NCBI RefSeq assembly: GCF_040938485.1
Contig: NW_027271595.1
Span: 434,001 to 498,000, forward strand
Origin: Diadema antillarum
Lineage: Eukaryota
Length of the DNA: 64,000 bases
Reading direction: 5' to 3'
Below, one piece after another: positions 1 through 26,110 of the stretch (position 1 is the first letter of the stretch; every line of letters begins with the position of its first letter). A program made the position numbers and the translations under genes. The notes beneath the pieces were generated by a model. The model searched no databases. It had not been told where the DNA came from and saw only the letters and a list, made by a program, of their open reading frames with translations.

Positions 1-563
1 ACCTTTCACCCCTTAATTTCCTACATGATCACTGCCAGTCAGTACATGCATAAATACTAAGTTCCATGAAGATACCTTGAAATATTTGTGAGATATGGAG
101 AAAAACGTGAAATTTTAACATTTTCACTTGACCTTTGACCCTTGACCTTTGACCTCATGACCCAAAGCTCTCTCTGGGGAATCTTTATTTGGTAGTTCAT
201 GTATACACCAAGTTTCAAGAAAATACCTCCAGGCATTGCATAAATACAGGGAAAATAGTGAAATTTTGAGCATTTGACCTTGACCTTTTGACCTTTGACC
301 TTGATCATGTGCGCCCAAAAGTTGATAGGCACAACTTCGCCCACTCATACATTTACATGCCAAGTTTCATTAGGATACCTCTAACAGTTTTTTAGATACG
401 CTGTCCACAAAATAACATTACGGACGGAAGGACGGACGGAAGGACGGACGGACGGAAGGACGGACGGACGGACGGAAGGACGGACGGACGGACGGAAGGA
501 CGGACGGACGGACGGACAACCCGAAAACATATTGCCTCCGGCGACACTTCGTGGCGGAGGCAT
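1..563 (-). mobile_element. Helentron/HINE (pearl/DINE-1-like) non-autonomous element, cut by the window edge
   Basis: On minus it starts ATGCCTCCGCCACGAAGTGTCGCCGGAGGCA (subterminal IR plus hairpin), then a (CCGT/CCTT)n microsatellite at 421-516 and GGTCAA-rich core repeats. It shares its first ~45 nt with 24749-26110. Confidence 0.7.
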
Positions 564-1497
564 AAAAATGGGGGAGGGGTGCGTGCGCCACCCCTTTAAT
601 TTTGTAAACGCGCCCCCTCTTTACGGAATTCCTGGATCCGCCCCTGACGTACGTGTACGTGTTTCTATCTATATGTGTATTACTTGTTTATGTGCTATTT
701 CAATATTTCTGCAAATCCCCCTGCCATCATGAGGGTTGCCCATATAAAAACAAAACAAGAACGAACAAACAAAAACAAACAAACTGACATTTGAGTCTTC
801 TGCTCGAGTAATTTCCATAAATGATAGATTCTGAATAGGGTAATCATACTAGTACAAGTGTATTACTATCTTGGCTGCCAGGGGGCAGATAACAAGTACG
901 TGTATGTAGTATATAGAATATAATGACATGAAATACATGCAAACATATACATATACAGTGTACATANNNNNNNNNNNNNNNNNNNNNNNNNNNNNNNNNN
1001 NNNNNNNNNNNNNNNNNNNNNNNNNNNNNNNNNNNNNNNNNNNNNNNNNNNNNNNNNNNNNNNNNNNNNNNNNNNNNNNNNNNNNNNNNNNNNNNNNNNN
1101 NNNNNNNNNNNNNNNNNNNNNNNNNNNNNNNNNNNNNNNNNNNNNNNNNNNNNNNNNNNNNNNNNNNNNNNNAATTACACTAGGCTGAAAATTGCTATCC
1201 ATATTCCATCCCTATTCAATTAAGTAAATCACTCTACTCCCAATTCATCTTCCATTAGTAGAGATTATGAGGCAATACTTTACTGCAAAAAACTGACAGC
1301 AGTAGATATTTCATCCAATGTAAATGCAAAAATTCCCAGTTACTGTCATCATTATAATGGTACTATGCTACATACTGTATTATCATCAGTAGCAGTACTA
1401 GCATTATTGTAATTCAACAAATCTTTGAGACTTTCCCTCCCCTGATTTCTTTGTTGTTGATTTTTCCCTCGACTTGCGAGCTAAAACCTTCCAATAG

Positions 1498-2466: not shown

Positions 2467-5400
2467 TCAAATTTTGTTGGCCAGGACCGGTTGGGAGTAG
2501 CGCCATCCATTTTGTAACTCTTGACTCAACTTCTTCACCAAGTCCTTATACTCGCTGTCATCTGCCACATTGTTGTCCTCCAGTGGGTCCACGCCTCTTA
2601 TGTAAAGCTCCCTTGCTTTCACGTCCGACCAATCAGCTTTGATCGTGGTGCCATTGAATCCGACCCATTCTGTGTAGTGGTAGTCTTCAGTCAGCATGGA
2701 ATAACCCATGACAGTGATGATCTCTAGGTTAGGCAGGTCTGTGTAGACACTCGGGGTCGTCCCTGGCCGGGGATACTGGCTGAAGGTAGCATTCTTCCAT
2801 CTGGAGAACTCTTGCTTGATCTCTTGTCTGCTGTGTGCCTTTACCAGGGGTGCAAAACTGTTCCCCTCTGCACAGAAGTCCACCTTGAATGGCTGTGGAG
2901 GGCAAACAGGTGGCACCTTCAGCCCAGCTAGCTCAGAAAGACTTGGAAACATGTCCACCAGTTCTACCAGCTCTTCGACCGCCACTCCAATATCACCCTT
3001 TAATTGTCTCTTTTGCTTTGTTGCAATTTTAGATGACAGCTTTGATTTCTCCCTTCTCTCCTTGGTAGCACGCTCAAAGGGGTCTCTAAGAGGGAATTTC
3101 CTCTTTGAACGCTGATAGTTTATGTCTGTCATCCCAGGAACGTGAACCATCAGAGGCACTCTTGTTGCCACTTCAAAGTTGGAATACTTGCACCATTCCC
3201 CATGCTCACCTAGTTGCCAACCTGTGAGATTGTTGACAGCATGTAATCATATAAATGCTGAAATATAGGAATACATTGCTCATGTTAATTAATATTTACA
3301 TCAAACTTGGTCGAAAATCTCTGTGCATCATGAGCCAAAGCCAACCAACGTGTAGAGAGTTATTTATATTGGGTGTCAGATCACTCTACACCAAGTGTAG
3401 AGCATATAGATCTGTGTAGATCTGTAATGTGTAGACACCAAGTGTAGATCTGTAATGCACATTTCTTGCCCATGGCTTTTGTGAGTATGAAAATGATGAT
3501 CATTTTGTTTCTCTTAGCTTGAAAAAGAAATGCTATTTACCTGCTGAAAAATTTCGGTACTGACATAATTTCATCAATACAAGTACACTCATACCGACAG
3601 CTTGGATTTTGGTTATTATCTAAAGATGCAATCACCTTTCACCAATAGGCAGTGAACTTTTGTCAAAGCTATAACTGTCACATACTTTGCCTTCTGAAAC
3701 TTTTGAGATAGCAAGTCAAAAATTCTTGGAGAGTTTCAATTTTGTCATGGTTTATTCCTTTATCCAGTCAAAGCCAATGTCTATACATTCCTTGATAGAC
3801 AGTCCCAGAAATGCAGAATTATACCTTCAACTTTGACCCACCCAATCCCTCTCAAACAGATAAGAATATCAAGATCATCATAACAAATTTTTCTGTGCTA
3901 TTACAGGTCCACACAACAACACTATTTATCAAAAAATACACCCACAAACAATGAGACATAAATTTGTAATACACACAAGTATATTGTGCATATGAAAAAC
4001 TTCAACTTGATGGCTTCAGTGTTACGTGAGAATTAAGAATGACAATGTCTGAGTGTTAATGTCATGCATAGAATCTCTAAAAGATATCATACTCTCTCAC
4101 CATGGTCTCCTACAAATGAGATGATGGTGTTGTTGGCAAATCCAGCCTCTTCCAGACCTTGGAGAACTCGGCCCAACTCGTAGTCAACGAAGGTTGATGC
4201 AGCATAATAACTCTGTCTCATCAAAGCCTGCACAGAGGCAGAAAAGAATAATTTATTGATGTTAAGATGGACACAGAAATGATATTCTTGTGCCGTCAGC
4301 AATGGCATTCCTGAGCAGTTAGAATTGTAAACTGTATGAAGCAATGCAAATGTGCATTTGTACTTAGATTTGACATCACAGAAACTGTCCTCTACTCGCA
4401 TGCCTCTATAACTCTCCTAAGATATAAGAAAATATTCCTCCCCCCAAAGAAAACAAAAAACAAAAAACAAAGACTAAATTATCTACACTATCAAATCGTG
4501 ACAACATCACTGTTTTTTTTCTTTCTTGTTCATGTTGAGAAGCATGTTTTGTGTGATATATCACCACAGTTGCTCACATGAAGTAGTGTTGAACTGCAGC
4601 CTATGGCTTATGGACAGCAGAGAACTGAGGCTGGCACTAGGGAGGACCACTCACATGATGGTCATCTGGAATGAGACCATACGGAAAGCTGAGGTTCATG
4701 GCTTTCATATCATCTCTCTGTCTGGCTGTAAAGAAGTCTTCCCAAGCCACGCTGGGCATTTTGGCTGGAATCTGCCTGTTGGGGGCGATCTCCACAGACT
4801 CCAGGGGATATAGGTCGCGGAACTCTTCAGGGTACTTCCAGTTCAGGTGTGGCTTCCTGAAGCCAACTGCCAGGAAGAAAGGCGAATCCCTGGTTGGTGA
4901 ATCTGGTGAGGAATTTTTCCTGTAAGAGTTCAAATGCTTATCATCAAATAAACCTGAATACACAAATAAAACTGTAGATACATGCATGATCATTAATACA
5001 TTATATGCTTTGTTCATTGTGCATGATAACATTTACATGACAAATTATTGCTCTGTCTTTTGTTACACATGAACAAACAATGAAACTCTTTGAATTTGTA
5101 TGAAAAACTTTTTTGGTGCTTTGTTAAATTCAATCTAATTTTTTTTTGTTGCAATCTCAAGTAAGTTTTAATGACTTAACACTTGATTTATCACAATAGC
5201 AGATAGTTCTACCAGCTATTCATATCATGCCAATTCAGCTTTTGTGAACACTGTTATACGTAAGTATTAGTGAGAGGGTGATGAACATTTTTAGCTGTAA
5301 AACAAGGAAAAGTAGAAATTACGCGGTGGGTAATATATGTCCCCGCCGGAAGTAGCATTTAGTAGCAAAAGGTACAATATAGGTAAAAAGATCAAGGTCA

Positions 5401-8400
5401 AAGGTCAAAGAAGTCAAAGGTCAAAATTCTGTGTAGAAGTTTTGAAGCCCTCACCTAGTGCCATCATATAAAGCAAACGGAATCAAAATCGGGTTAGAAA
5501 TGGCGAAGGAGTAGCATTTTGAAGCAAAATGTACAATATAGGTCAAAGGTCAAGGTCAAAGGTCACAACTGAAATTCTGTATAGAAGTTTCAAAGCTCCC
5601 ATGTAGTGCTATCATATAAAGCAAACAGAATCAAAATCGGGTTAGAAATGGCGAAGGAGTAGCATTTTGATCAATTTGATCACACACGGACGCACAGACG
5701 GACGGACGGACGCACGGACGGACGGACGGACAGACGGACGGACAGACGGACGGACACACACACGTACGGAGCCCGTTTCATAGTCCCCTGCTCGAACTCG
5801 TTCGGCGGGGACAATTAAGAGTGATAAAGAGAATGTTGGACCTCACCTGGCAGCAGACAAGTTAGCCAGGATCTCCAAGGCTCTCTCAGTGGTCTGAAGA
5901 TCTGGAAGGGAATGTTCAGGCATCCTGGACACGTTGACTGGACACACCACATTGTTGTGAAGTTTTCCATCTTCTGAGGGACACACCTATTATCAGACAA
6001 ATTAAAGGGCAATGATATTTGACCGCAATAATTACAGAGTGTTTGTTGTGCATTATTTATGTACATGTGCGTGCCTATGTGTGTGCATAAGGATTTACAG
6101 ATTAATAGGGACGAAAGATAGAACAGAGCACAAGTGTATCCTCAGATATAACCTACAACCATTTGTTTGCATCTTCTTCCTTGAATGATTATGAAACAAT
6201 GATCTAGTCTAATTCAAAACAAACAAACAAACAAAAAACAAACAAACAAACAAATAAACAAACAAACAAACATATGTGCATATATATCGCGGATTCAAAA
6301 ATAAATACATTTTATGTGTGGTTGCATTACTTTGTTTCATAAGTTCTTTATTATATAGCCTTCATTGGAAACATTTGCTTACCTTGGCATAAACATACTT
6401 CTCTGTAGAAGCATGATATGGAGGAATAGACCAGCTGTATGGGTAGTCATCTGTTCCATTAGAAGCTACACCTGAATTTCCAGTGAAATCAAAGGATATC
6501 TTGACATTCCACACACAGACACTGCATTGGACAATGCATCTTATAAAGTTATATTGCACTTAATGGATCAATAGCATGTATCTATGTGAAATTGAATTTT
6601 CAACAGAAATTAATAATGCTAGTTTGAAGCGTATGTGCTAGTAAAAACCATCTGAATGATTTGTTAACAGTGATAGATCTATAAAGAATCACTGCAATAA
6701 ATGACATGTGAAAGTCTATTGATACGATATGTAATTCATGAGCTATTAGTATCATCATAGACAACAGTGACGGATCATGGGGGAGTGCACCGGATGCCCC
6801 CTTTTATTTTTTGTTAAAACAAAACAAAACAAAACAAAAATGGGGGGGCATATGCACCTCCACTTTAATTTTGTAAAGGTGTCCCCCTCCCCCCTTTTAC
6901 AGAATTCCTGGAAACGCCCTTGTAGAAAGTAAGCTAAATTTGATAAGATGCATTATATCTTACAGACTTGGTATGGGGATACCATGCAATGGGAAAGCTA
7001 ATCTGACTCAAATATATTCAAGCATCCCAGGAATAAATTGTGAATAACTTTATCACTGATCTCTATGTAATTACACAAGTAGCCAAAGAACACCAATGAG
7101 AGTATGCTTCCATGCACATATTCATGAACAGGCAAGTCTATTCCAACAGGCCGACAATGGCCATGGTTTTTTAATGTACAGATATTCAGGGGGGCATTTC
7201 ATGAAGGAACTTGTCGGATAAAATATCAGACAAGTCAATTATATCCGACAAGTTTTGAGAAATTCTTTAGTCTGATTGGCTGATTTCTCTGAACTTGTCG
7301 GATATAAATGACTTGTCGGACATTTTATTCGACAAGTTCCTTCATGAAACGCCCCCCAGATGGCAGCGAAAGAAGACTGATTCAATCAGGCCAGCCTTAT
7401 CTCTCCACACTACAGAGATTTTAACCCATTGAGGACGGACTGATTTTGCTACAACAGGGATTTCCCATAGACACCTGTCTGAGTACACTTGGGACTCGTC
7501 CTCAATGGTTCAAGAGAAAAAGACTGATTCAATAAATTGGCAGAAAACTTTTGTGTTTCATTTGGTTTGGGATGTCTCTACTTAGAGAAGCACAGAAGAC
7601 AATTTTCAAAACATTGAGACTTTGATTTACATGTAGGTAGTCACAATCCATTTGTGACTGCTGACTATGTCCACATGCTGAATCTGAGTTTCGAAAACAA
7701 AAACAACAACAAAACCCTTCCTAGTTTAATAGTAAATATACCTGGATGAAAAACCTTGCCAACTGATGCAGTAAAGTAACCATTTTCCTTGAAGTGTTGA
7801 GGGAGAGTGGTGTAGTTTCCTGCGAAGGTTCTCCAGTAGAAGCCAAAGTCATAGAGTTTGGTTGTGTCTGGTCTGCGTCCTGTCAAAAATGAGATTCGGC
7901 TTGGGCCACAGACAGCTTGCTGAATTTAAAAAAAAAAAACCACCCAAATGAAAAATAATCAGTTTGACAACCGATATCTCATCACTGTGCATATCAGTTG
8001 CAATATGTATTTCCTGTGTACTGTAGGCCTATAATCCTACCTCCCCTCCCTCACCACCATAAAAAGAAAAATGACAATAAAAGAAAAAAATGCAGATCAA
8101 CAGACTGTATTCAAAAACTATGATCCACAAAAATCATGATAGACTTATTGTACATTGTATATACCCACCAATGCAAGTGGATTGAAAGTCAGCTTTTCTT
8201 TTTTTGTGTACAGAGAACTTTAATTTAGAGAAGCTTCCAAAGATCTTTATTTGATTGAGTGTGTGTTTGGGCATGCACTTCTTGACCTTCTGATTTAGTT
8301 CATCAAGCCATTTTTTTTTAACCTGCCTATGATGGAGATGCTGTAATGCAGACAATATTTTTGATAGAAATGAATAAATATCTTCACCCCAGTTATACAT

Positions 8401-9070
8401 GCAACACATTACCTGCACAAAGGCATTGTTGAAGACTGCAGATTGGGAAGCCAGTTGGTCAAGGTTTGGGGATATAATTGGACCACCATAGCAATTCAGC
8501 GATGCTCGTAGATCATCAGCAACTATGAACAGCACATTTGGTTTTGAGTTTGACGCTTCTCCTGGAAAAGCAATGAGAAACGTGTTTTAACCATTTTTGC
8601 AAGATTGGTTAACAAACTTTAACTTCCTTAATAAAAAAAACACCCTTGGTATATTGAAGCATGGTTGCAGCAGCTTACACAATGTCATGTCAAAGAAAAC
8701 ACTCTGTCTCTGTCATATGAAATATGGTGGAGTACAACGTATCTGAGCAGAGCAACTAATTCGACATTCTAGAGCACTGCAACTTTATTTAAAGACCAAG
8801 GGGGAAAAAAAGCAAATCTCACTTTCAATATCTCATCTGATGCTTTAATATACAACAAATTTCATCAATTTTACTAGGGTCTACACCAATTGTAGAAGTT
8901 CAGGACACCACCACAGCTCAGCCACACTGACATGACCACAATAGGGTAAAATTTACTGGTACATGTAGTTGATAGATGTGCAGGGGGCGGATCCAGGAAT
9001 TCGTGGTAAAGGGGGAAGGGGCGCAAAAAAAAAAAATTCTGGTGCCACTTCCAGGTTTAATCAGCTGACA

Positions 9071-9106
<36 letters not shown>

Positions 9107-9986
9107 AAAAGCCTCACATACTTTTTTTTTTGTTTTTTTTTTGTCACGCGTCATTCTTTTAACTTTGTGCCAATAATCCAAGGAAATACTCTTCTTCCTG
9201 GTGGTGAGCAACCACAAAACAACTAGGCCTAGATCTCAGCCCCATCTAGTTTGTGTCATGGTTTACTATTATGAGAACTAGATTTTCAATATGTCACTTT
9301 CAAATTTAAATTGTTGAATTGGATGTCTACGGGCCGGACGAATCAGTCAACATGGACTAAAAGGAGGTCGGCATATGTATATAAATTCATAAATAACCAT
9401 CAATCATAGCTAGTACTAGGTAGTAGAGACTAGAGTAGTAAACATGGTAAATAGTAGGCAGCACGGTCATTTCCTGTTCCCTGGTAGTTTGTGTCTTCCT
9501 AACCCCGTCGCGGGACGCGTTTTTTTTTAAAGACGGCACAGATTGGGGCATGGCGCGTGTTAAACCTATTTTATGGGAAAAACGTTGGGTTAGGGTTTTT
9601 GGTTATGGTTATGGTTAGGGTTAGGGTTAGGGTTAGGGTTTGATGGTTAGGGTTAGGATTAGGATTAGGGTTAGGTTTAGGGATAGGGTCCCCGATAGAT
9701 TTTTAGTTTCCCCAATCTGTGCCGTCTAAAAAAAACACGCTCGCGGGACGCTGTAACACAGTAACAGCCCGTATTTGTCCGTATGGGGTCGCTGCTGCGG
9801 TTAGTGTCTTCCATAATATTTGTCTTTGCCTTTATACTGCCTTGGCTTTTAAGTTTTATCTCATTTTGCCGAGGGTAAATGAATAAATAAATCGTTACCT
9901 CTCCTGGTAAGTAACAGTATGAAAGGAATGACGAAGTACTGGTATCTTGAAAGGATCATCCTGTCCCTGGTTGTGGCAGAAGACAT
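2467..9986 (-). CDS. IDS: Iduronate-2-sulfatase, copy A (8 coding exons)
   Basis: Exons 9986-9899 ([30 protein letters not shown]), 8561-8413 ([11 protein letters not shown]), 7919-7742 ([20 protein letters not shown], CxPxR formylglycine motif; GKVFH), 6471-6383, 5986-5847, 4919-4655 (KPH), 4227-4101 (GDH), 3221-2467 ([13 protein letters not shown]..stop). All introns are GT-AG with consistent phases. The 178/89/127-nt exons match human IDS exons 3/4/7. Exon 1 is the least certain. Confidence 0.93.
5300..5814 (-). mobile_element. HINE/pearl-like element, second family, in IDS-A intron 5
   Basis: 11-bp subterminal IR TGTCCCCGCCG (5338-5348) / CGGCGGGGACA (5803-5813); (GACG)n tract 5685-5760; ~150-bp core repeats; hairpin ATTAC..GTAAT at 5318-5334. 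Confidence 0.7.
7187..7359. mobile_element. Palindromic MITE
   Basis: ~30-bp TIR C(A/T)GGGGGGC(A/G)TTTCATGAAGGAACTTGTCG at both ends. Confidence 0.75.
7421..7513. mobile_element. piggyBac-like MITE
   Basis: TTAACCCATTGAGGACG...CGTCCTCAATGGTTCAA; reverse-oriented relative at 61789-61881 with TTAA at both ends. Confidence 0.65.
9517..9740. mobile_element. Mutator-like MITE carrying (TTAGGG)n-like repeats
   Basis: TIR GCGTTTTT..AGACGGCACAGATTGGGG / CCCCAATCTGTGCCGTCT..AAAACACGC; perfect 9-bp TSD TCGCGGGAC at 9508-9516 and 9741-9749; GGTTAG repeats at ~9587-9688. Confidence 0.8.
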
Positions 9987-10064: not shown

Positions 10065-10122
10065 GTGTCACGTGACACTAGATGCATCATGTGACACGAA
10101 TCTGAGTACACTGTCACGTGAT
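10065..10122. promoter_or_regulatory. CLEAR/E-box cluster (MiT/TFE sites) between divergent IDS copies
   Basis: GTCACGTGAC 10067-10076 (inside the 14-bp palindrome GTGTCACGTGACAC), TCATGTGAC 10087-10095, GTCACGTGAT 10113-10122; ~80 nt upstream of the IDS-A ATG. Confidence 0.75.
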
Positions 10123-23800: not shown

Positions 23801-24564
23801 GTAATTGTTTTGCAGGGTACCAACTAGGAGAGCACGGAGAATGGAGTAAGTGTTCCAACTTTGAAGTGGCAACGAGAGTGCCTCTAATAGTGCACGTTCC
23901 TGGGATGACCGACACAAAGTTTCCACAGTTAAAGGCTAAATTTCCTCTCAGAGATCCTTTCCAACAGGCTTCCAAGAACATAAAGGAGAAATCAAAGCCA
24001 ACATCTAAACTTCCAGTTGGTGCAAAGAGACGCTTAAAGGGTGATATTGGAGTGGCAGTTGAAGAGCTGGTAGAACTGGTGGACTTGTTTCCAAGTCTGT
24101 CTGAGCTGGCTGGGCTGAAGGTACCACCTGTTTGCCCTCCACAGCCATTCAAGGTGGACTTCTGTGCAGAGGGGAACAGTTTTGCACCCCTGGTAAAGGC
24201 ACACAGCAGACAAGAGATCAAGCAAGAGTTTTCCAGATGGAAGAATGCTACCTTCAGCCAGTATCCCCGGCCAGGGACGACCCCGAGCGTCTACACAGAC
24301 CTGCCTAACCTAGAGATCATCACTGTCATGGGTTATTCCATGCTGACTGAAGACTACCACTACACAGAATGGGTCGGATTCAACGGCACCACGATCAAAG
24401 CTGATTGGTCGGATGTGAAAGCGAGGGAGCTTTACATCAGAGGCGTGGACCCACTGGAGGACAACAATGTGGCAGATGAAAGCGAGTATAAGGACTTGGT
24501 GCTGAAGTTGAGTCAAGAGTTACAAAATGGATGGCGCTACTCCCAGCCTGTCATGGCCAACTGA
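11821..24564 (+). CDS. IDS: Iduronate-2-sulfatase, copy B (8 coding exons)
   Basis: Exons 11821-11878 ([20 protein letters not shown], signal peptide), 12483-12625, 13324-13501 (VCGPSR), 15057-15145, 21345-21484, 21860-22124, 23306-23432, 23816-24564. All GT-AG with the same phases as copy A; no stops or frameshifts; AATAAA at 24657-24662. Confidence 0.93.
13524..14460 (-). mobile_element. 5'-truncated L2/CR1-group LINE (C-terminal ORF2 plus 3' tail)
   Basis: ORF 14453-13728 with [35 protein letters not shown]; 3' end AAGCGCTTTG..GAAAAAGCGCTATATAAAT then (TAT)n. Confidence 0.85.
15186..16325 (-). mobile_element. 5'-truncated CR1/L2-group LINE, second family
   Basis: ORF 16319-15906 ([28 protein letters not shown]); AATAAA then a (TTGAA)n tail at 15186-15230. 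Confidence 0.75.
16442..17583 (-). mobile_element. hAT-like non-autonomous element with internal ~167-bp minisatellite (copy 1)
   Basis: 8-bp TSD CTATCGTA at 16434-16441 and 17584-17591; termini CAGGCGCGCCGGAAG..CCTATG; reverse complement of 19195-20709; N-gap inside. Confidence 0.85.
17691..19063 (+). mobile_element. HINE-like element, third family, with ~330-bp tandem cores
   Basis: 5' GCTCACCTGAGCCAAAGGCTCAAGTGAGC hairpin; 3' CTCAGGTGAGC subterminal IR (19031-19041) plus short stem-loop; T-rich flanks; about four core repeats. Confidence 0.75.
19195..20709 (+). mobile_element. hAT-like non-autonomous element with internal ~167-bp minisatellite (copy 2)
   Basis: 8-bp TSD GGTACTAG at 19187-19194 and 20710-20717; TIR CATAGGCGCCGGAAG / CTTCCGGCGCGCCTG (12/15 match). 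Confidence 0.88.
22173..22320. mobile_element. Small TIR element with degenerate (CCCTAA)n interior
   Basis: AGGGCAATTACCCC ... GGGGTAATTGCCCT enclosing CCTAACCCTAACCCTAA-type repeats. Confidence 0.6.
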
Positions 24565-24748
24565 AATTAGCAAGACTTTCCTGAGACCATGTATATTATG
24601 TTATACTTTAACATGTTATTTGACCATTTGTCAAATACATAAGAAATTCAAAAAACAATAAAATACTTTTTCTGATGGCACAATTTTTTTCTCTTGCATT
24701 TGCGAAGGACACTAAAAAGAATATTTACTCAAAAAATGTGCCTTTTTT

Positions 24749-26110
24749 ATGCCTCCGCCACGAAGTGGAGCTGGAGGCATTATGTTTTCGGGTTGTCCGT
24801 CCGTCCGGCCGTCCGTACGTCCGTACGTCCGTACGTACGTCTGTACGTACGTCCGTACCGTATGTACGTCCGTCCGCTTTCGTTTACGCGATAACTTGAG
24901 TAATATTTACTGGAATTTTACCAAACTTGGTCCAAGTATGAAGTATGATGGGGCAATGATTTGATTAGATTTTGGGTGAAATCGGCTAAAGGTCAAAGGT
25001 CAAAGGTCAAGGTCAAATCATGAAATTTATCCATTTATGCGATAACTCAAGACTGTATGGAGCAAATTTCACCAAACTTTGTTGGAGGATGATGTATGAT
25101 GGGACAATTACTTGATTAGTTTTTCAGTGAAATCGTACAGAGGTCAAAGGTCAAAGATCAAGGTCAAATCCTAAAATTTATCTGTTTACGTGATAACTCA
25201 AAACTGGATGAATCAGCTTTCACAAAACTTGGTCCAAGGATGATGTATGATGGGACAATTAGTTGAGTAGATTTTAGTGACATTGACAAGAGGTCAAAGG
25301 TCAAAAGGTCAAGGTCAAATGCTAAAAATGTTGCTATTTCCCCCATATCTATGCAATGCCCACAGTTATTTTCTTGAAACTTAGTGTAGACATGTACTAC
25401 TGCATAAAGATTCTCCAGAGAGAGTTTCATGTCATAAGGTCAAAAGGTCAAAAGGTCAAAGGTTAGGTGAAAATGTTGCAATATCACTTTTCTCGCATAT
25501 GGTTCAATGTATCTTCATGGAACTTGGTACATATGCATGTACTGACTGGCAGGGATTATCTAGGGAATTTAGGGGTCATGGGTCAATAGCCAGGGGGTCA
25601 AAGGTCAAGGTCAACTCCTCAAAATGTTACTATTTCCCTCATAGTATATGCAATGATTGCATTATTAGTTTTAAAATTTAATATATGTACATGTATTACT
25701 TAATGGAGATTCTCTTGGACATTTCAAGCCAGAAGGTCAAAGGTCGAAGGTTAAGGGTCAAAGGTTAGGTTTAAGTTAAAAAAAAAGAGATATTTTGTAC
25801 TGTAATTACACACTTTCTTCATATCTTGAAAATTATACTCAATGCATAAACTTATAATAAGGTCGGTCAGAAGTCAAGTAAAAATTTTCAATTCCCCAAA
25901 TATGTGTACCTGCACTCTCTAATAGACAATTATAGCAAACCCAGTTCGTGGAAAGTGAACATTCAAGATATTTCTGACAAACCTGCTATTTCGATATTTT
26001 GCCAGTTATGTGAAACTGTCATCACACATTGTGAAGACATTGTACTATACACCTATTGGGAGAATCATGTATTATGGCGGAGGCATCAGTCGCCGTAGCG
26101 ACATTTCTAG
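24749..26110 (+). mobile_element. Complete HINE/Helentron-associated element
   Basis: ATGCCTCCGCCA 24749-24760 / TGGCGGAGGCAT 26075-26086 subterminal IRs; 3' hairpin GTCGCCGTAGCGAC 26089-26102; (CCGT/ACGT)n tract; ~150-bp cores; T-runs on both flanks; no TSD. Confidence 0.8.

What the first reader, a model, noticed from the sequence alone, without database searches (positions are those of the whole stretch)
23816..24060. Divergence island at the GWxLGEHGEWxKY active-site motif and the following basic loop
Seen: the first ~245 nt of the last exon escape homogenisation. Copy A reads [18 protein letters not shown] and copy B reads [18 protein letters not shown], with many silent differences. Then comes a ~40-aa K/R-rich loop that is mostly different ([19 protein letters not shown] vs [19 protein letters not shown]). 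After it the proteins are essentially identical for ~130 aa. Established: human IDS has D334-H335-G-W337..K347-Y348 here, with metal-binding and catalytic residues. Inference: selection protects W>Y and Y>C substitutions from conversion, so copy B may have altered substrate specificity, for example towards invertebrate sulfated glycans or fucans.
Basis: partly seen in the sequence, partly recalled or inferred. Interest (0 to 1): 0.78.

Follow-up and report, generated by a model that had tools for sequence, protein, structure and literature searches.

The report
Old divergence island in twin sulfatases
Two back-to-back iduronate-sulfatase-like genes of the sea urchin Diadema keep their coding exons alike by copying from each other, except for a 245-base stretch that covers part of the catalytic pocket and a floppy basic loop. 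That stretch has stayed different in two species, which marks copy B as a working enzyme with a remodelled pocket, a known kind of pattern seen here in a new gene family.

Summary
The window (Diadema antillarum) holds two head-to-head S1_7 (iduronate-2-sulfatase-like) genes: A on the minus strand (9959-2467) and B on the plus strand (11821-24564).

- **Exons versus introns:** Exons are 94-99% identical, but introns and 3' UTRs cannot be aligned between the copies. Orthologous introns of D. setosum do align. The exons are therefore homogenised, most likely by gene conversion.
- **The island:** The first 81 codons of the last exon have A-B dS 0.57 and dN 0.20. The rest of the gene has dS 0.12 and dN 0.015.
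- **Tree depth:** The A|B branch is 0.229 in the island, 0.014 in the rest, and 0.003 in 1241 nt of core exon sequence.
- **Not private to this assembly:** The same head-to-head pair occurs in D. setosum and on a second D. antillarum contig. [13 protein letters not shown] is fixed in B and [13 protein letters not shown] in A.
- **Polarity and constraint:** B's W337Y, C346S and Y348C are derived. Since the species split, B's motif has evolved at dN/dS 0.03.
- **Catalytic residues:** All ten are kept in both copies.
- **The loop:** It is modelled with low confidence (pLDDT below 50 at residues 393-408) and is hypervariable across the family.

Passive loss of homology started by the fast-evolving loop is a live rival. 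Divergence islands in gene pairs under conversion are a known kind; this is a new member.

The parts
23816..24060 (+). Divergence island in copy B: first 245 nt of the last exon. The clustered differences end near 24033.
   Evidence: A-B p-distance is 0.19-0.23 here against 0.038-0.049 elsewhere. dS is 0.57 and dN 0.20. The A|B branch is 0.229 with 100/100 support.
2977..3221 (-). The same island in copy A.
   Evidence: blastn and codon alignment of the two last exons, with no indels.
23816..23913 (+). Active-site motif part of the island in B (33 codons, [13 protein letters not shown] ... P-G-M-T-D). Y, the human W337 position, is at 23818-23820. S (position 346) is at 23845-23847. K (K347) is at 23848-23850. 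C (Y348) is at 23851-23853.
   Evidence: A-B dS is 0.50-0.60 and dN 0.07-0.08. B orthologues differ by 8 synonymous and 1 replacement change, dN/dS 0.03.
23914..24057 (+). Basic K/R-rich loop part of the island in B (48 codons). It matches the human surface loop around 366-398 but is about 20 residues longer.
   Evidence: A-B dS is 0.55 and dN 0.30. B residues 393-408 have pLDDT below 50. Human residues 386-392 are poorly ordered. Length and sequence differ in every echinoid paralogue.
3184..3219 (-). Copy A codons for W (3219-3217), C (3192-3190), K (3189-3187) and Y (3186-3184). These are the ancestral states.
   Evidence: Polarity from 13 echinoid paralogues and 17 other deuterostome sequences.
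22004..22124 (+). Second, smaller patch of divergence shared across species: 3' half of exon 6 of B. Fixed differences lie at human positions 270, 272, 276 and 292, flanking R273 and D269 of the substrate cleft.
   Evidence: Orthology-type sites cluster here. Difference counts are, the list of fixed differences, and the cleft residues.
4655..4775 (-). The same exon-6 patch in copy A, which carries the derived states M276 and H292.
11821..24564 (+). Copy B gene. Exons: 11821-11878, 12483-12625, 13324-13501, 15057-15145, 21345-21484, 21860-22124, 23306-23432, 23816-24564. Product 582 aa.
   Evidence: All splice sites are AG/GT and the reading frame is continuous. The translation is identical to XP_071504146.1 (P0238).
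2467..9959 (-). Copy A gene. Exons: 9959-9899 (exon 1, putative start), 8561-8413, 7919-7742, 6471-6383, 5986-5847, 4919-4655, 4227-4101, 3221-2467.
   Evidence: The C-terminal 407 aa are identical to XP_071504145.1 (P0237). Exon 1 is 100% identical to that of the full-length model on the second contig.
10068..10121 (.). Shared region between the two first exons, with two TCACGTGA (CLEAR-type) boxes at 10068 and 10114.
   Evidence: Both boxes are kept at matching places in D. setosum (L002) and on the second D. antillarum contig (L003). Their function was not tested.

Best explanation
Copies A and B are an old inverted (head-to-head) duplicate pair of formylglycine-dependent sulfatases of subfamily S1_7, found in Diadema. 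Their introns and UTRs have diverged beyond alignment. Their exons have been repeatedly overwritten by each other through interlocus gene conversion confined to exon-sized stretches of homology. The last broad homogenisation fell near the D. antillarum / D. setosum split.

The first ~245 nt of the last exon, together with a small patch in exon 6 and the C-terminal codons, kept the original divergence. In that island copy B acquired W337Y, C346S and Y348C beside the catalytic lysine. Both copies also diverged freely in a flexible basic loop.

B is a functional, constrained sulfatase whose sulfate and sugar pocket differs from A's. I infer that convertants which reset these pocket residues are removed by selection. 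Once the neighbouring loop had diverged to about 28%, lack of homology reinforced the barrier.

Shown: the island, its age, its conservation across species, the polarity of the changes, and the constraint on B. Inferred: that selection is the cause, and that specificity has changed.
For: 1. Exon-only homology. Paralogues align over about 1850 nt, which is the exons. Orthologues align over about 80% of the gene, introns included.
2. Outside the island, A-B dS is 0.11-0.155 and orthologue dS is 0.13-0.14. In the island, A-B dS is 0.57 against an orthologue dS of 0.20.
3. Trees. The island A|B branch is 0.229 (100/100), and the concerted topology is rejected at p = 2e-6. In 1241 nt of core exons the branch is 0.003, and the concerted topology is not rejected (p = 0.15).
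4. The same head-to-head pair, with the same A-type and B-type motifs, occurs in the D. setosum chromosome assembly and on a second D. antillarum contig.
5. B's motif changes are derived. W is present in 128 of 135 relatives. Since the species split B's motif has dN/dS 0.03, and the rest of B 0.06.
6. All ten catalytic residues and the CxPSR motif are kept. The model has pLDDT 89 and TM-score 0.94-0.95 to human IDS.
7. An isolated 89-nt exon (exon 4) is still homogenised, and exon edges in general are only slightly more divergent (0.047-0.067 against 0.037). Short length or an edge position alone does not explain the 14% divergence of the 99-nt motif.
8. The second patch of fixed differences flanks R273 and D269, which also line the substrate cleft.
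9. The characterised S1_7 xylose-2-sulfatase P18_S1_7 (6HHM) has Y at position 337 and H at 348. Y337 is therefore compatible with activity, and here it goes with a different sugar.
10. Contigs of run X1 join exon 6 to exon 7 exactly at the exon borders. They come in two forms...DDYH (B-type) and ...DDHH (A-type), and one contig runs on into a B-like 3' UTR.
Against: No biochemical data exist for either enzyme.

The loop makes up 59% of the island. It evolves at dN/dS 0.5-1.1, is partly modelled with low confidence, and is hypervariable in all paralogues. It would escape conversion without any selection. The motif then sits between an unalignable intron and a loop that is 28% diverged, so its escape could be collateral.

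Position 348 is variable family-wide (Y, F, H, C, Q, N, T, S), so Y348C need not be a large functional step.

Evidence for conversion after the species split is thin: 6-8 concerted sites against 2-4 background sites. Conversion pressure on the island today may be weak.

Expression of B in D. antillarum itself was not shown. X1 is another, coded organism, its RNA status is inferred from the splice joints, and none of its contigs covered the island at 90% likeness or more.
Confidence: 0.55

Rival explanations
1. Passive escape. The island is real and old, but no selection holds it. The weakly constrained loop diverged as fast as the introns and lost the homology that conversion needs. This left the adjacent 99-nt motif stranded between two stretches without homology. 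B's W337Y, C346S and Y348C are then neutral or mildly compensated changes in a redundant copy, and both enzymes do much the same job.
For: Loop dN/dS is 0.5-1.1. B residues 393-408 have pLDDT below 50, and the human equivalent is poorly ordered. The loop is hypervariable in length and sequence in every echinoid paralogue. Concerted evolution confined to coding sequence, where only constrained sequence stays similar enough to convert, is described for yeast duplicates (PMC3924837). Position 348 is naturally variable. GC3 is 0.37-0.44 in the island against 0.53-0.56 in the rest, which fits less conversion there whatever the cause.
Against: Exon 4 is 89 nt, has unalignable introns on both sides, and is nevertheless homogenised (2 differences within the window). 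Edges of exons 2, 3 and 5 show no excess divergence. All four polarisable changes in the conserved motif stretch (V332I, W337Y, C346S, Y348C) are derived in B, and they were followed by strong constraint (dN/dS 0.03). That looks like a burst followed by a hold, not drift. W337 is kept in 95% of relatives. A second patch of fixed differences also lies on the substrate cleft.
Confidence: 0.33
2. The island was imported. A and B are a young duplicate pair, and one copy received this segment by conversion from a third, more distant IDS paralogue of the same cluster.
For: The contig carries at least seven IDS-like genes, one of them directly downstream of A. One of these, P0242, also has K-C at positions 347-348.
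Against: Introns and UTRs of A and B cannot be aligned, although orthologous introns align well. The pair is therefore old. Across the island, A and B are each other's closest relatives (70% identity), and no other protein exceeds 60%, most of that within the conserved motif. The loop motifs [12 protein letters not shown] and [12 protein letters not shown] are shared only by A and B.
Confidence: 0.03
3. Copy B is a decaying or non-functional duplicate. Its reading frame is kept open only because copy A keeps overwriting it. The island shows its true, degenerating state.
For: B carries substitutions at positions that are strongly (W337) or moderately (Y348) conserved. Expression in D. antillarum was not shown directly.
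Against: The island is not being overwritten, yet its motif part shows 8 synonymous changes against 1 replacement between the B orthologues. The frame, splice sites, signal-peptide exon, CxPSR motif and all ten catalytic residues are intact in three B genes. The model is confident. A B-type spliced contig exists in X1.
Confidence: 0.05
4. Assembly artefact. The two copies are alleles (haplotigs) joined head to head by mis-assembly.
For: The window has five N gaps, three of them in B's introns. The D. antillarum assembly holds two contigs with the same gene set.
Against: The same head-to-head pair lies in the chromosome-level D. setosum assembly and on the second D. antillarum contig, each with one A-type and one B-type gene. 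Genomic contigs of runs X2-X4 carry the B-type island joined to B's intron 7. Divergence of 23% with unalignable introns is far beyond allelic.
Confidence: 0.01

Closest known systems
Human iduronate-2-sulfatase (IDS; PDB 5FQL, 6IOZ), SulfAtlas subfamily S1_7
   Same: The match to 5FQL has E = 5e-168 over nearly the full length. About 48-49% of residues are identical in the structural alignment, and the TM-score is 0.94-0.95. The CxPSR formylglycine motif and all ten active-site residues (D45, D46, C84, R88, K135, H138, H229, D334, H335, K347) are present in both copies. R273 is kept.
   Different: Both Diadema copies have Y for N167, L for K479 and R for H226, all of which are docked-substrate contacts in human IDS. 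Copy B also has Y for W337 and C for Y348. The surface loop is about 20 residues longer and strongly basic. Echinoids have five IDS-like subfamilies and Diadema at least seven genes, so no single gene is 'the' IDS orthologue.
P18_S1_7 (FA22070, PDB 6HHM), the endo-acting xylose-2-sulfate sulfatase for ulvan of Formosa agariphila
   Same: It belongs to the same S1_7 subfamily, is the third-best structural match, and removes a 2-O-sulfate. It has Y at the W337 position, like copy B, and does not have Y at 348 (it has H).
   Different: It is bacterial, only 26% identical, and has H, not C, at 348. Its substrate is an algal polysaccharide. The resemblance is a lead about which residues can vary with specificity, not a sign of shared function.
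Peaks of divergence in paralogues under gene conversion (primate red/green opsin exon 5, colobine RNASE1, Tigriopus GOT1; theory of Teshima and Innan as reviewed in PMC3924837)
   Same: Paralogues are kept alike by conversion except in a narrow peak around functionally important replacements. The differences in the peak are shared across species, so the tree follows orthology in the peak and is star-like or concerted elsewhere.
   Different: In opsins and RNASE1 the introns are the homogenised part. Here the introns are completely diverged and only the exons are homogenised, so the island has no homogenised non-coding flank on its 5' side. This makes the test for selection weaker.
Coding-restricted concerted evolution of yeast whole-genome-duplication pairs (PMC3924837)
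   Same: Homology and conversion are confined to coding sequence. Non-coding sequence cannot be aligned, which the review explains by purifying selection keeping only coding DNA similar enough to convert.
   Different: Here the coding sequence is split into seven exons of 89-749 nt, and each behaves as a separate piece of homology. The pair is inverted and 1.9 kb apart at the 5' ends.

Membership tests
Formylglycine-dependent (S1) sulfatase | C-x-P-S-R motif for formylglycine formation | tested here: met
   C-G-P-S-R is present in A and B, aligned to human C84-R88.
Formylglycine-dependent (S1) sulfatase | Pfam Sulfatase domain above the gathering score | tested here: met
   PF00884 scores 131.5 bits for B and 126.9 bits for the A copy on the second contig (P0121). 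The cut-off is 25.
Formylglycine-dependent (S1) sulfatase | Metal ligands and catalytic residues (D45, D46, R88, K135, H138, H229, D334, H335, K347 by human IDS numbering) | tested here: met
   All are present in B by alignment to 5FQL, and in A by the family alignment.
Subfamily S1_7 / iduronate-2-sulfatase fold | Overall fold matches solved IDS | tested here: met
   The AlphaFold2 model of B has pLDDT 89.2 and pTM 0.90. Foldseek gives TM-scores of 0.95 to 6IOZ and 0.94 to 5FQL, with the S1_7 ulvan sulfatase 6HHM next. Copy A was not modelled.
Iduronate-2-sulfatase in the strict sense (EC 3.1.6.13) | Residues that contact docked iduronate-2-sulfate in human IDS (N167, R273, Y348, K479) | tested here: not met
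   R273 is kept. N167 is Y and K479 is L in both copies. Y348 is kept in A and is C in B. These contacts come from docking, not from a solved complex.
Iduronate-2-sulfatase in the strict sense (EC 3.1.6.13) | Hydrolysis of the 2-sulfate of L-iduronate in heparan or dermatan sulfate | not testable with these tools
   This needs an enzyme assay.
Lysosomal or secreted enzyme | N-terminal signal peptide | tested here: inconclusive
   Exon 1 of all six genes encodes a short hydrophobic N-terminus, for example [17 protein letters not shown] in B. No signal-peptide predictor was available.
Paralogue pair under concerted evolution by interlocus gene conversion | Paralogues are far more alike in part of their length than their age allows | tested here: met
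   Exons are 94-99% identical while introns and 3' UTRs cannot be aligned. Orthologous introns align over about 80% of the gene.
Paralogue pair under concerted evolution by interlocus gene conversion | Outside the island, paralogue divergence is no greater than orthologue divergence, and the tree is star-like or concerted | tested here: met
   dS is 0.11-0.155 between paralogues against 0.13-0.14 between orthologues. The A|B branch is 0.003 in core exons, and the concerted topology is not rejected (p = 0.15).
Paralogue pair under concerted evolution by interlocus gene conversion | Conversion events after the species split | tested here: inconclusive
   There are 6-8 concerted-type sites against 2-4 cross-type (background) sites. 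Exon 4 of A and B in the window differs at 2 sites, while the two A haplotypes differ at 5. The numbers are small.
Selection-maintained divergence peak (opsin-type) | A narrow peak of divergence with fixed differences shared across species | tested here: met
   31 of 47 orthology-type sites fall in 245 of about 1680 nt. 15 of the 23 fixed amino-acid differences lie in the island (B residues 335-403).
Selection-maintained divergence peak (opsin-type) | The peak is held by selection against convertants, not by loss of homology | tested here: inconclusive
   In favour: derived pocket changes followed by dN/dS 0.03, a homogenised 89-nt exon, and weak edge effects. Against: the fast-evolving loop that forms most of the island. 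Population data are needed.

The most novel reading that the evidence does not exclude
The echinoid IDS-like expansion (five subfamilies, at least seven genes in one Diadema cluster) is a toolkit of 2-O-sulfatases for echinoderm-specific sulfated glycans such as 2-sulfated alpha-L-fucans and galactans. The position after the catalytic lysine (348: Y, F, C or T) acts as a recurrent specificity switch. Within this toolkit the A/B pair would be a case where natural selection holds a three-residue pocket rewrite (W337Y, C346S, Y348C) against gene conversion. Copy B would then have a substrate that no characterised animal sulfatase handles.
Probability: 0.15. Interest if true: 0.75.

Novelty: new member of a known kind. 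Interest (0 to 1): 0.45.

Why it matters
This is a clean natural experiment with replication across species. Gene conversion erases most differences between two sulfatase genes, so the few that survive point to the residues most likely to matter.

Those residues sit at the sulfate and sugar pocket of an enzyme family whose human member causes Hunter syndrome. They include one position (348) that varies among paralogues across animals. This gives a short, testable list of candidate specificity determinants for S1_7 sulfatases: 337, 346 and 348, plus 270-276 and 292.

It also shows that sea urchins have a large, unstudied IDS-like family. For molecular evolution, it adds an example in an intron-rich animal gene where conversion is confined to individual exons, the reverse of the opsin case. 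The phenomenon itself is already well described.

Tried and rejected
- A megablast of the last exon against the phage collection found nothing and was irrelevant.
- The first word-based protein search, using the 248-aa last exon, returned only distant paralogues (55% identity or less). Its length filter excludes the 580-aa orthologues. A profile headed by a 421-aa relative (A2) then found them.
- Assembly artefact or allelic copies: rejected, because the pair is conserved in D. setosum and on a second contig.
- Import of the island from a third paralogue: rejected for the sampled proteins.
- Exon-edge effect as the cause of the motif's divergence: tested, and only a weak general effect was found.
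- Synonymous-site selection as the cause of exon similarity: rejected, because orthologue dS equals paralogue dS while only the paralogous introns cannot be aligned.
- The main text of the review of human IDS variants was searched for W337 and Y348 variants with no hit. Its supplements were not searched.
- RNA evidence in D. antillarum itself: no RNA run is indexed for this sequence. The single read-laying run gave genomic contigs of a D. setosum-like organism and spliced contigs of another coded organism.
- Model coordinates are not exposed to scripts, so distances from the fixed differences to the active site could not be computed. Positions were judged from the human structure paper instead.
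- The N gaps were left as they are.
Full report
**What is in the window**

The finding lies in the last exon of an iduronate-2-sulfatase-like gene. The window holds two such genes, head to head.

- Copy B is on the plus strand, with eight exons from 11821 to 24564.
- Copy A is on the minus strand, with eight exons from 9959 to 2467.
- All introns have AG/GT borders and the reading frames are continuous.
- The B model is identical to NCBI protein XP_071504146.1 of Diadema antillarum. The C-terminal 407 residues of A are identical to XP_071504145.1.
- No further copy lies in the window.

Both proteins are formylglycine-dependent sulfatases. The Pfam Sulfatase domain scores 127-131 bits. The match to human IDS (5FQL) has E = 5e-168. 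An AlphaFold2 model of B (pLDDT 89, pTM 0.90) superposes on 6IOZ and 5FQL with TM-scores of 0.95 and 0.94.

**Check of the observation**

Divergence between the copies, by Nei-Gojobori:

| Region | Codons | dS | dN |
|---|---|---|---|
| Island (start of last exon, 23816-24057) | 81 | 0.57 | 0.20 |
| Remaining exons 2-8 | 480 | 0.12 | 0.015 |

The excess of synonymous differences in the island is significant (Fisher p = 2e-6). A sliding window shows one sharp peak. After the island, 130 residues are identical. The clustered differences end near 24033. A thin tail of fixed sites runs to about 24100, and two more differences sit in the last 12 nt of exon 7. In the mRNA the island therefore straddles the exon 7/8 junction.

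**Are the exons really homogenised?**

Yes. Between A and B, identity drops from 94-99% to nothing within 5-25 nt of every splice site and right at the stop codon. I fetched the locus from the D. setosum chromosome assembly (L002) and from a second D. antillarum contig (L003). Both carry the same head-to-head pair.

- Orthologous genes align over about 80% of their length, introns included.
- Paralogues align over only about 1850 nt, which is the exons.
- Outside the island, paralogue dS (0.11-0.155) equals orthologue dS (0.13-0.14).

A young duplication would have alignable introns, and an old unconverted one would have diverged exons. Only exon-confined interlocus conversion fits both facts.

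Maximum-likelihood trees of the six genes:

| Partition | A-B branch | Support | Concerted topology |
|---|---|---|---|
| Island (245 nt) | 0.229 | 100/100 | rejected, p = 2e-6 |
| All other exon sequence (1430 nt) | 0.014 | 100/99 | rejected, p = 5e-4 |
| Core exons, without two small patches (1241 nt) | 0.003 | 64/82 | not rejected, p = 0.15 |

By branch lengths or by dS, the duplication is at least 3 to 4.5 times older than the species split. The last broad homogenisation fell near that split. Evidence for later events is modest. There are 6-8 concerted-type sites against 2-4 background sites, and exon 4 of A and B in the window differs at 2 sites while the two A haplotypes differ at 5.

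**Are B's residues private to this assembly?**

No. [13 protein letters not shown] occurs in both D. antillarum B genes and in D. setosum [14 protein letters not shown] occurs in all three A genes. Genomic contigs of runs X2-X4 also carry the B-type island joined to B's intron 7. Their differences match D. setosum.

**What the residues do**

In human IDS (PMC5472762):
- W337, together with K347, positions the calcium ligand D46.
- Y348 hydrogen-bonds the docked iduronate-2-sulfate and, through a water, the sulfate.
- R273, N167 and K479 are further docked contacts.
- D269 and K479 are flexible.
- Residues 386-392 are poorly ordered.

Both Diadema copies keep all ten catalytic residues and R273. 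Both have Y for N167, L for K479 and R for H226. Neither is therefore a plain copy of the vertebrate enzyme.

Among 135 relatives, position 337 is W in 128, Y in 5 and F in 2. Position 348 is Y in 77, F in 34, H in 12 and C in 5. Comparison with 13 echinoid paralogues and 17 other deuterostome sequences shows that B's Y337, S346, C348 and I332 are derived. A is derived at M276 and H292, in a second, smaller patch in the 3' half of exon 6, beside R273 and D269.

In total, 23 amino-acid differences are fixed between A and B in both species. None lies in exons 2-5.

**Is B functional?**

- Since the species split, the 33-codon motif of B has 8 synonymous changes and 1 replacement (dN/dS 0.03). 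The rest of B has dN/dS 0.06. The island is not being overwritten by A, so this constraint is B's own.
- The signal-peptide exon is intact in all six genes.
- Run X1 (a coded organism, 5-8% diverged) has contigs that join exon 6 to the first base of exon 7. They come in two forms, one ending D-D-Y-H (B-type) and one D-D-H-H (A-type). One contig continues into a B-like 3' UTR.
- This is indirect evidence that both types are transcribed in a relative. It does not cover the island, and it is not D. antillarum.

**What holds the island?**

Two readings remain.

In its favour:
- B's pocket changes look like a burst followed by a hold.
- A second fixed patch also lies on the substrate cleft.
- Exon 4, an isolated 89-nt piece of homology, is homogenised. 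Exon edges in general are only slightly more divergent (0.047-0.067 against 0.037), so short length or an edge position does not explain 14% divergence in the 99-nt motif.
- The characterised S1_7 xylose-2-sulfatase 6HHM has Y at 337 and H at 348. Y337 is thus compatible with catalysis and, in that enzyme, goes with a different sugar.

*Passive escape.* In its favour:
- 59% of the island is a basic loop that evolves at dN/dS 0.5-1.1.
- B residues 393-408 have pLDDT below 50, and the loop differs in length and sequence in every paralogue.
- Such sequence loses homology as introns do. It would then wall off the motif from the homogenised 3' part of the exon.
- The review cited above gives the same explanation for coding-restricted conversion in yeast.

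I put the selection-assisted reading at about 0.55 and the passive reading at about 0.33. Import from a third paralogue is unlikely, because across the island A and B are each other's closest relatives (70% against 60% or less). A decaying B and an assembly artefact are also unlikely.

**Context**

A protein tree places A and B in a Diadema-only clade within an echinoid expansion of five IDS-like subfamilies. At least seven IDS-like genes lie on this one contig. Subfamily S1_7 is known to hold several specificities: iduronate-2-sulfate, xylose-2-sulfate and galactose-4-sulfate of kappa-carrageenan. A change of sugar within the family is therefore plausible, but for the urchin genes it remains speculation.

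**Verdict**

The phenomenon, a divergence island in a pair evolving in concert, is well known. This is a new, well-replicated member in an unstudied gene family, with a short list of candidate specificity residues that can be tested at the bench.

Noticed in passing
window 9560-9700 (intron 1 of copy A) and about 22190-22310 (intron 6 of copy B): Telomere-like (TTAGGG/CCCTAA)n runs lie inside introns. The run in B's intron 6 attracts enormous contig depth (up to about 270,000) and loose ends reading CCTAACCCTAACCC in the genomic runs, so it belongs to a highly repeated family.
   Followed up: no
window 15146-21344 (intron 4 of copy B; N gaps at 16507-16635 and 20506-20644): This intron is 6.2 kb here but only about 1.5 kb in the B gene of the second D. 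antillarum contig (L003). This looks like a large insertion or haplotype difference, partly unassembled. The gaps were not filled.
   Followed up: no
L002 14361-19270 (D. setosum, intron 2 of copy A): A 1079-aa open reading frame with integrase and aspartic-protease domains, apparently a retroelement, sits on the opposite strand inside the intron. It stretches D. setosum A to 17 kb.
   Followed up: no
window 10068-10075 and 10114-10121: Two palindromic TCACGTGA boxes (CLEAR/E-box type) lie between the two first exons, about 100 nt upstream of A's first exon. Both are conserved in D. setosum and on the second D. antillarum contig. This fits a shared promoter of the lysosomal-gene type.
   Followed up: partly
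window 8-571 against 24741-25576: Inverted matches of 81-85% identity lie beyond the 3' ends of both genes, although the 3' UTRs next to the stop codons do not align. They may be remnants of the original inverted duplication or a shared repeat.
   Followed up: no
L003 22872-27837 and proteins P0122, P0128, P0130, P0239, P0240, P0242: D. antillarum has at least seven IDS-like genes on this contig, one directly downstream of copy A. Echinoids as a group have five IDS-like subfamilies. The paralogue P0242 (P0003 in D. setosum) independently has C at position 348. A Lytechinus variegatus paralogue (P0126) independently has Y at 337 with T at 348.
   Followed up: partly
L003 against the window (the two D. 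antillarum contigs): The two A genes differ at dS 0.10, nearly as much as the species do. The two B genes differ at dS 0.045 and have identical last exons. Per-exon distances are mosaic: exon 6 of the second A gene is closer to B than the window's A is. This suggests that conversion tracts are segregating as polymorphisms.
   Followed up: partly
island against the rest of the coding sequence, all six genes: Third-position GC is 0.37-0.44 in the island and 0.53-0.56 in the homogenised exons. This is what GC-biased gene conversion would produce, but the island has only 81 codons and is rich in Lys and Arg codons.
   Followed up: no
window 24800-24880: An imperfect short tandem repeat (CGTCCGTA-like units) lies about 250 nt downstream of B's stop codon.
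   Followed up: no
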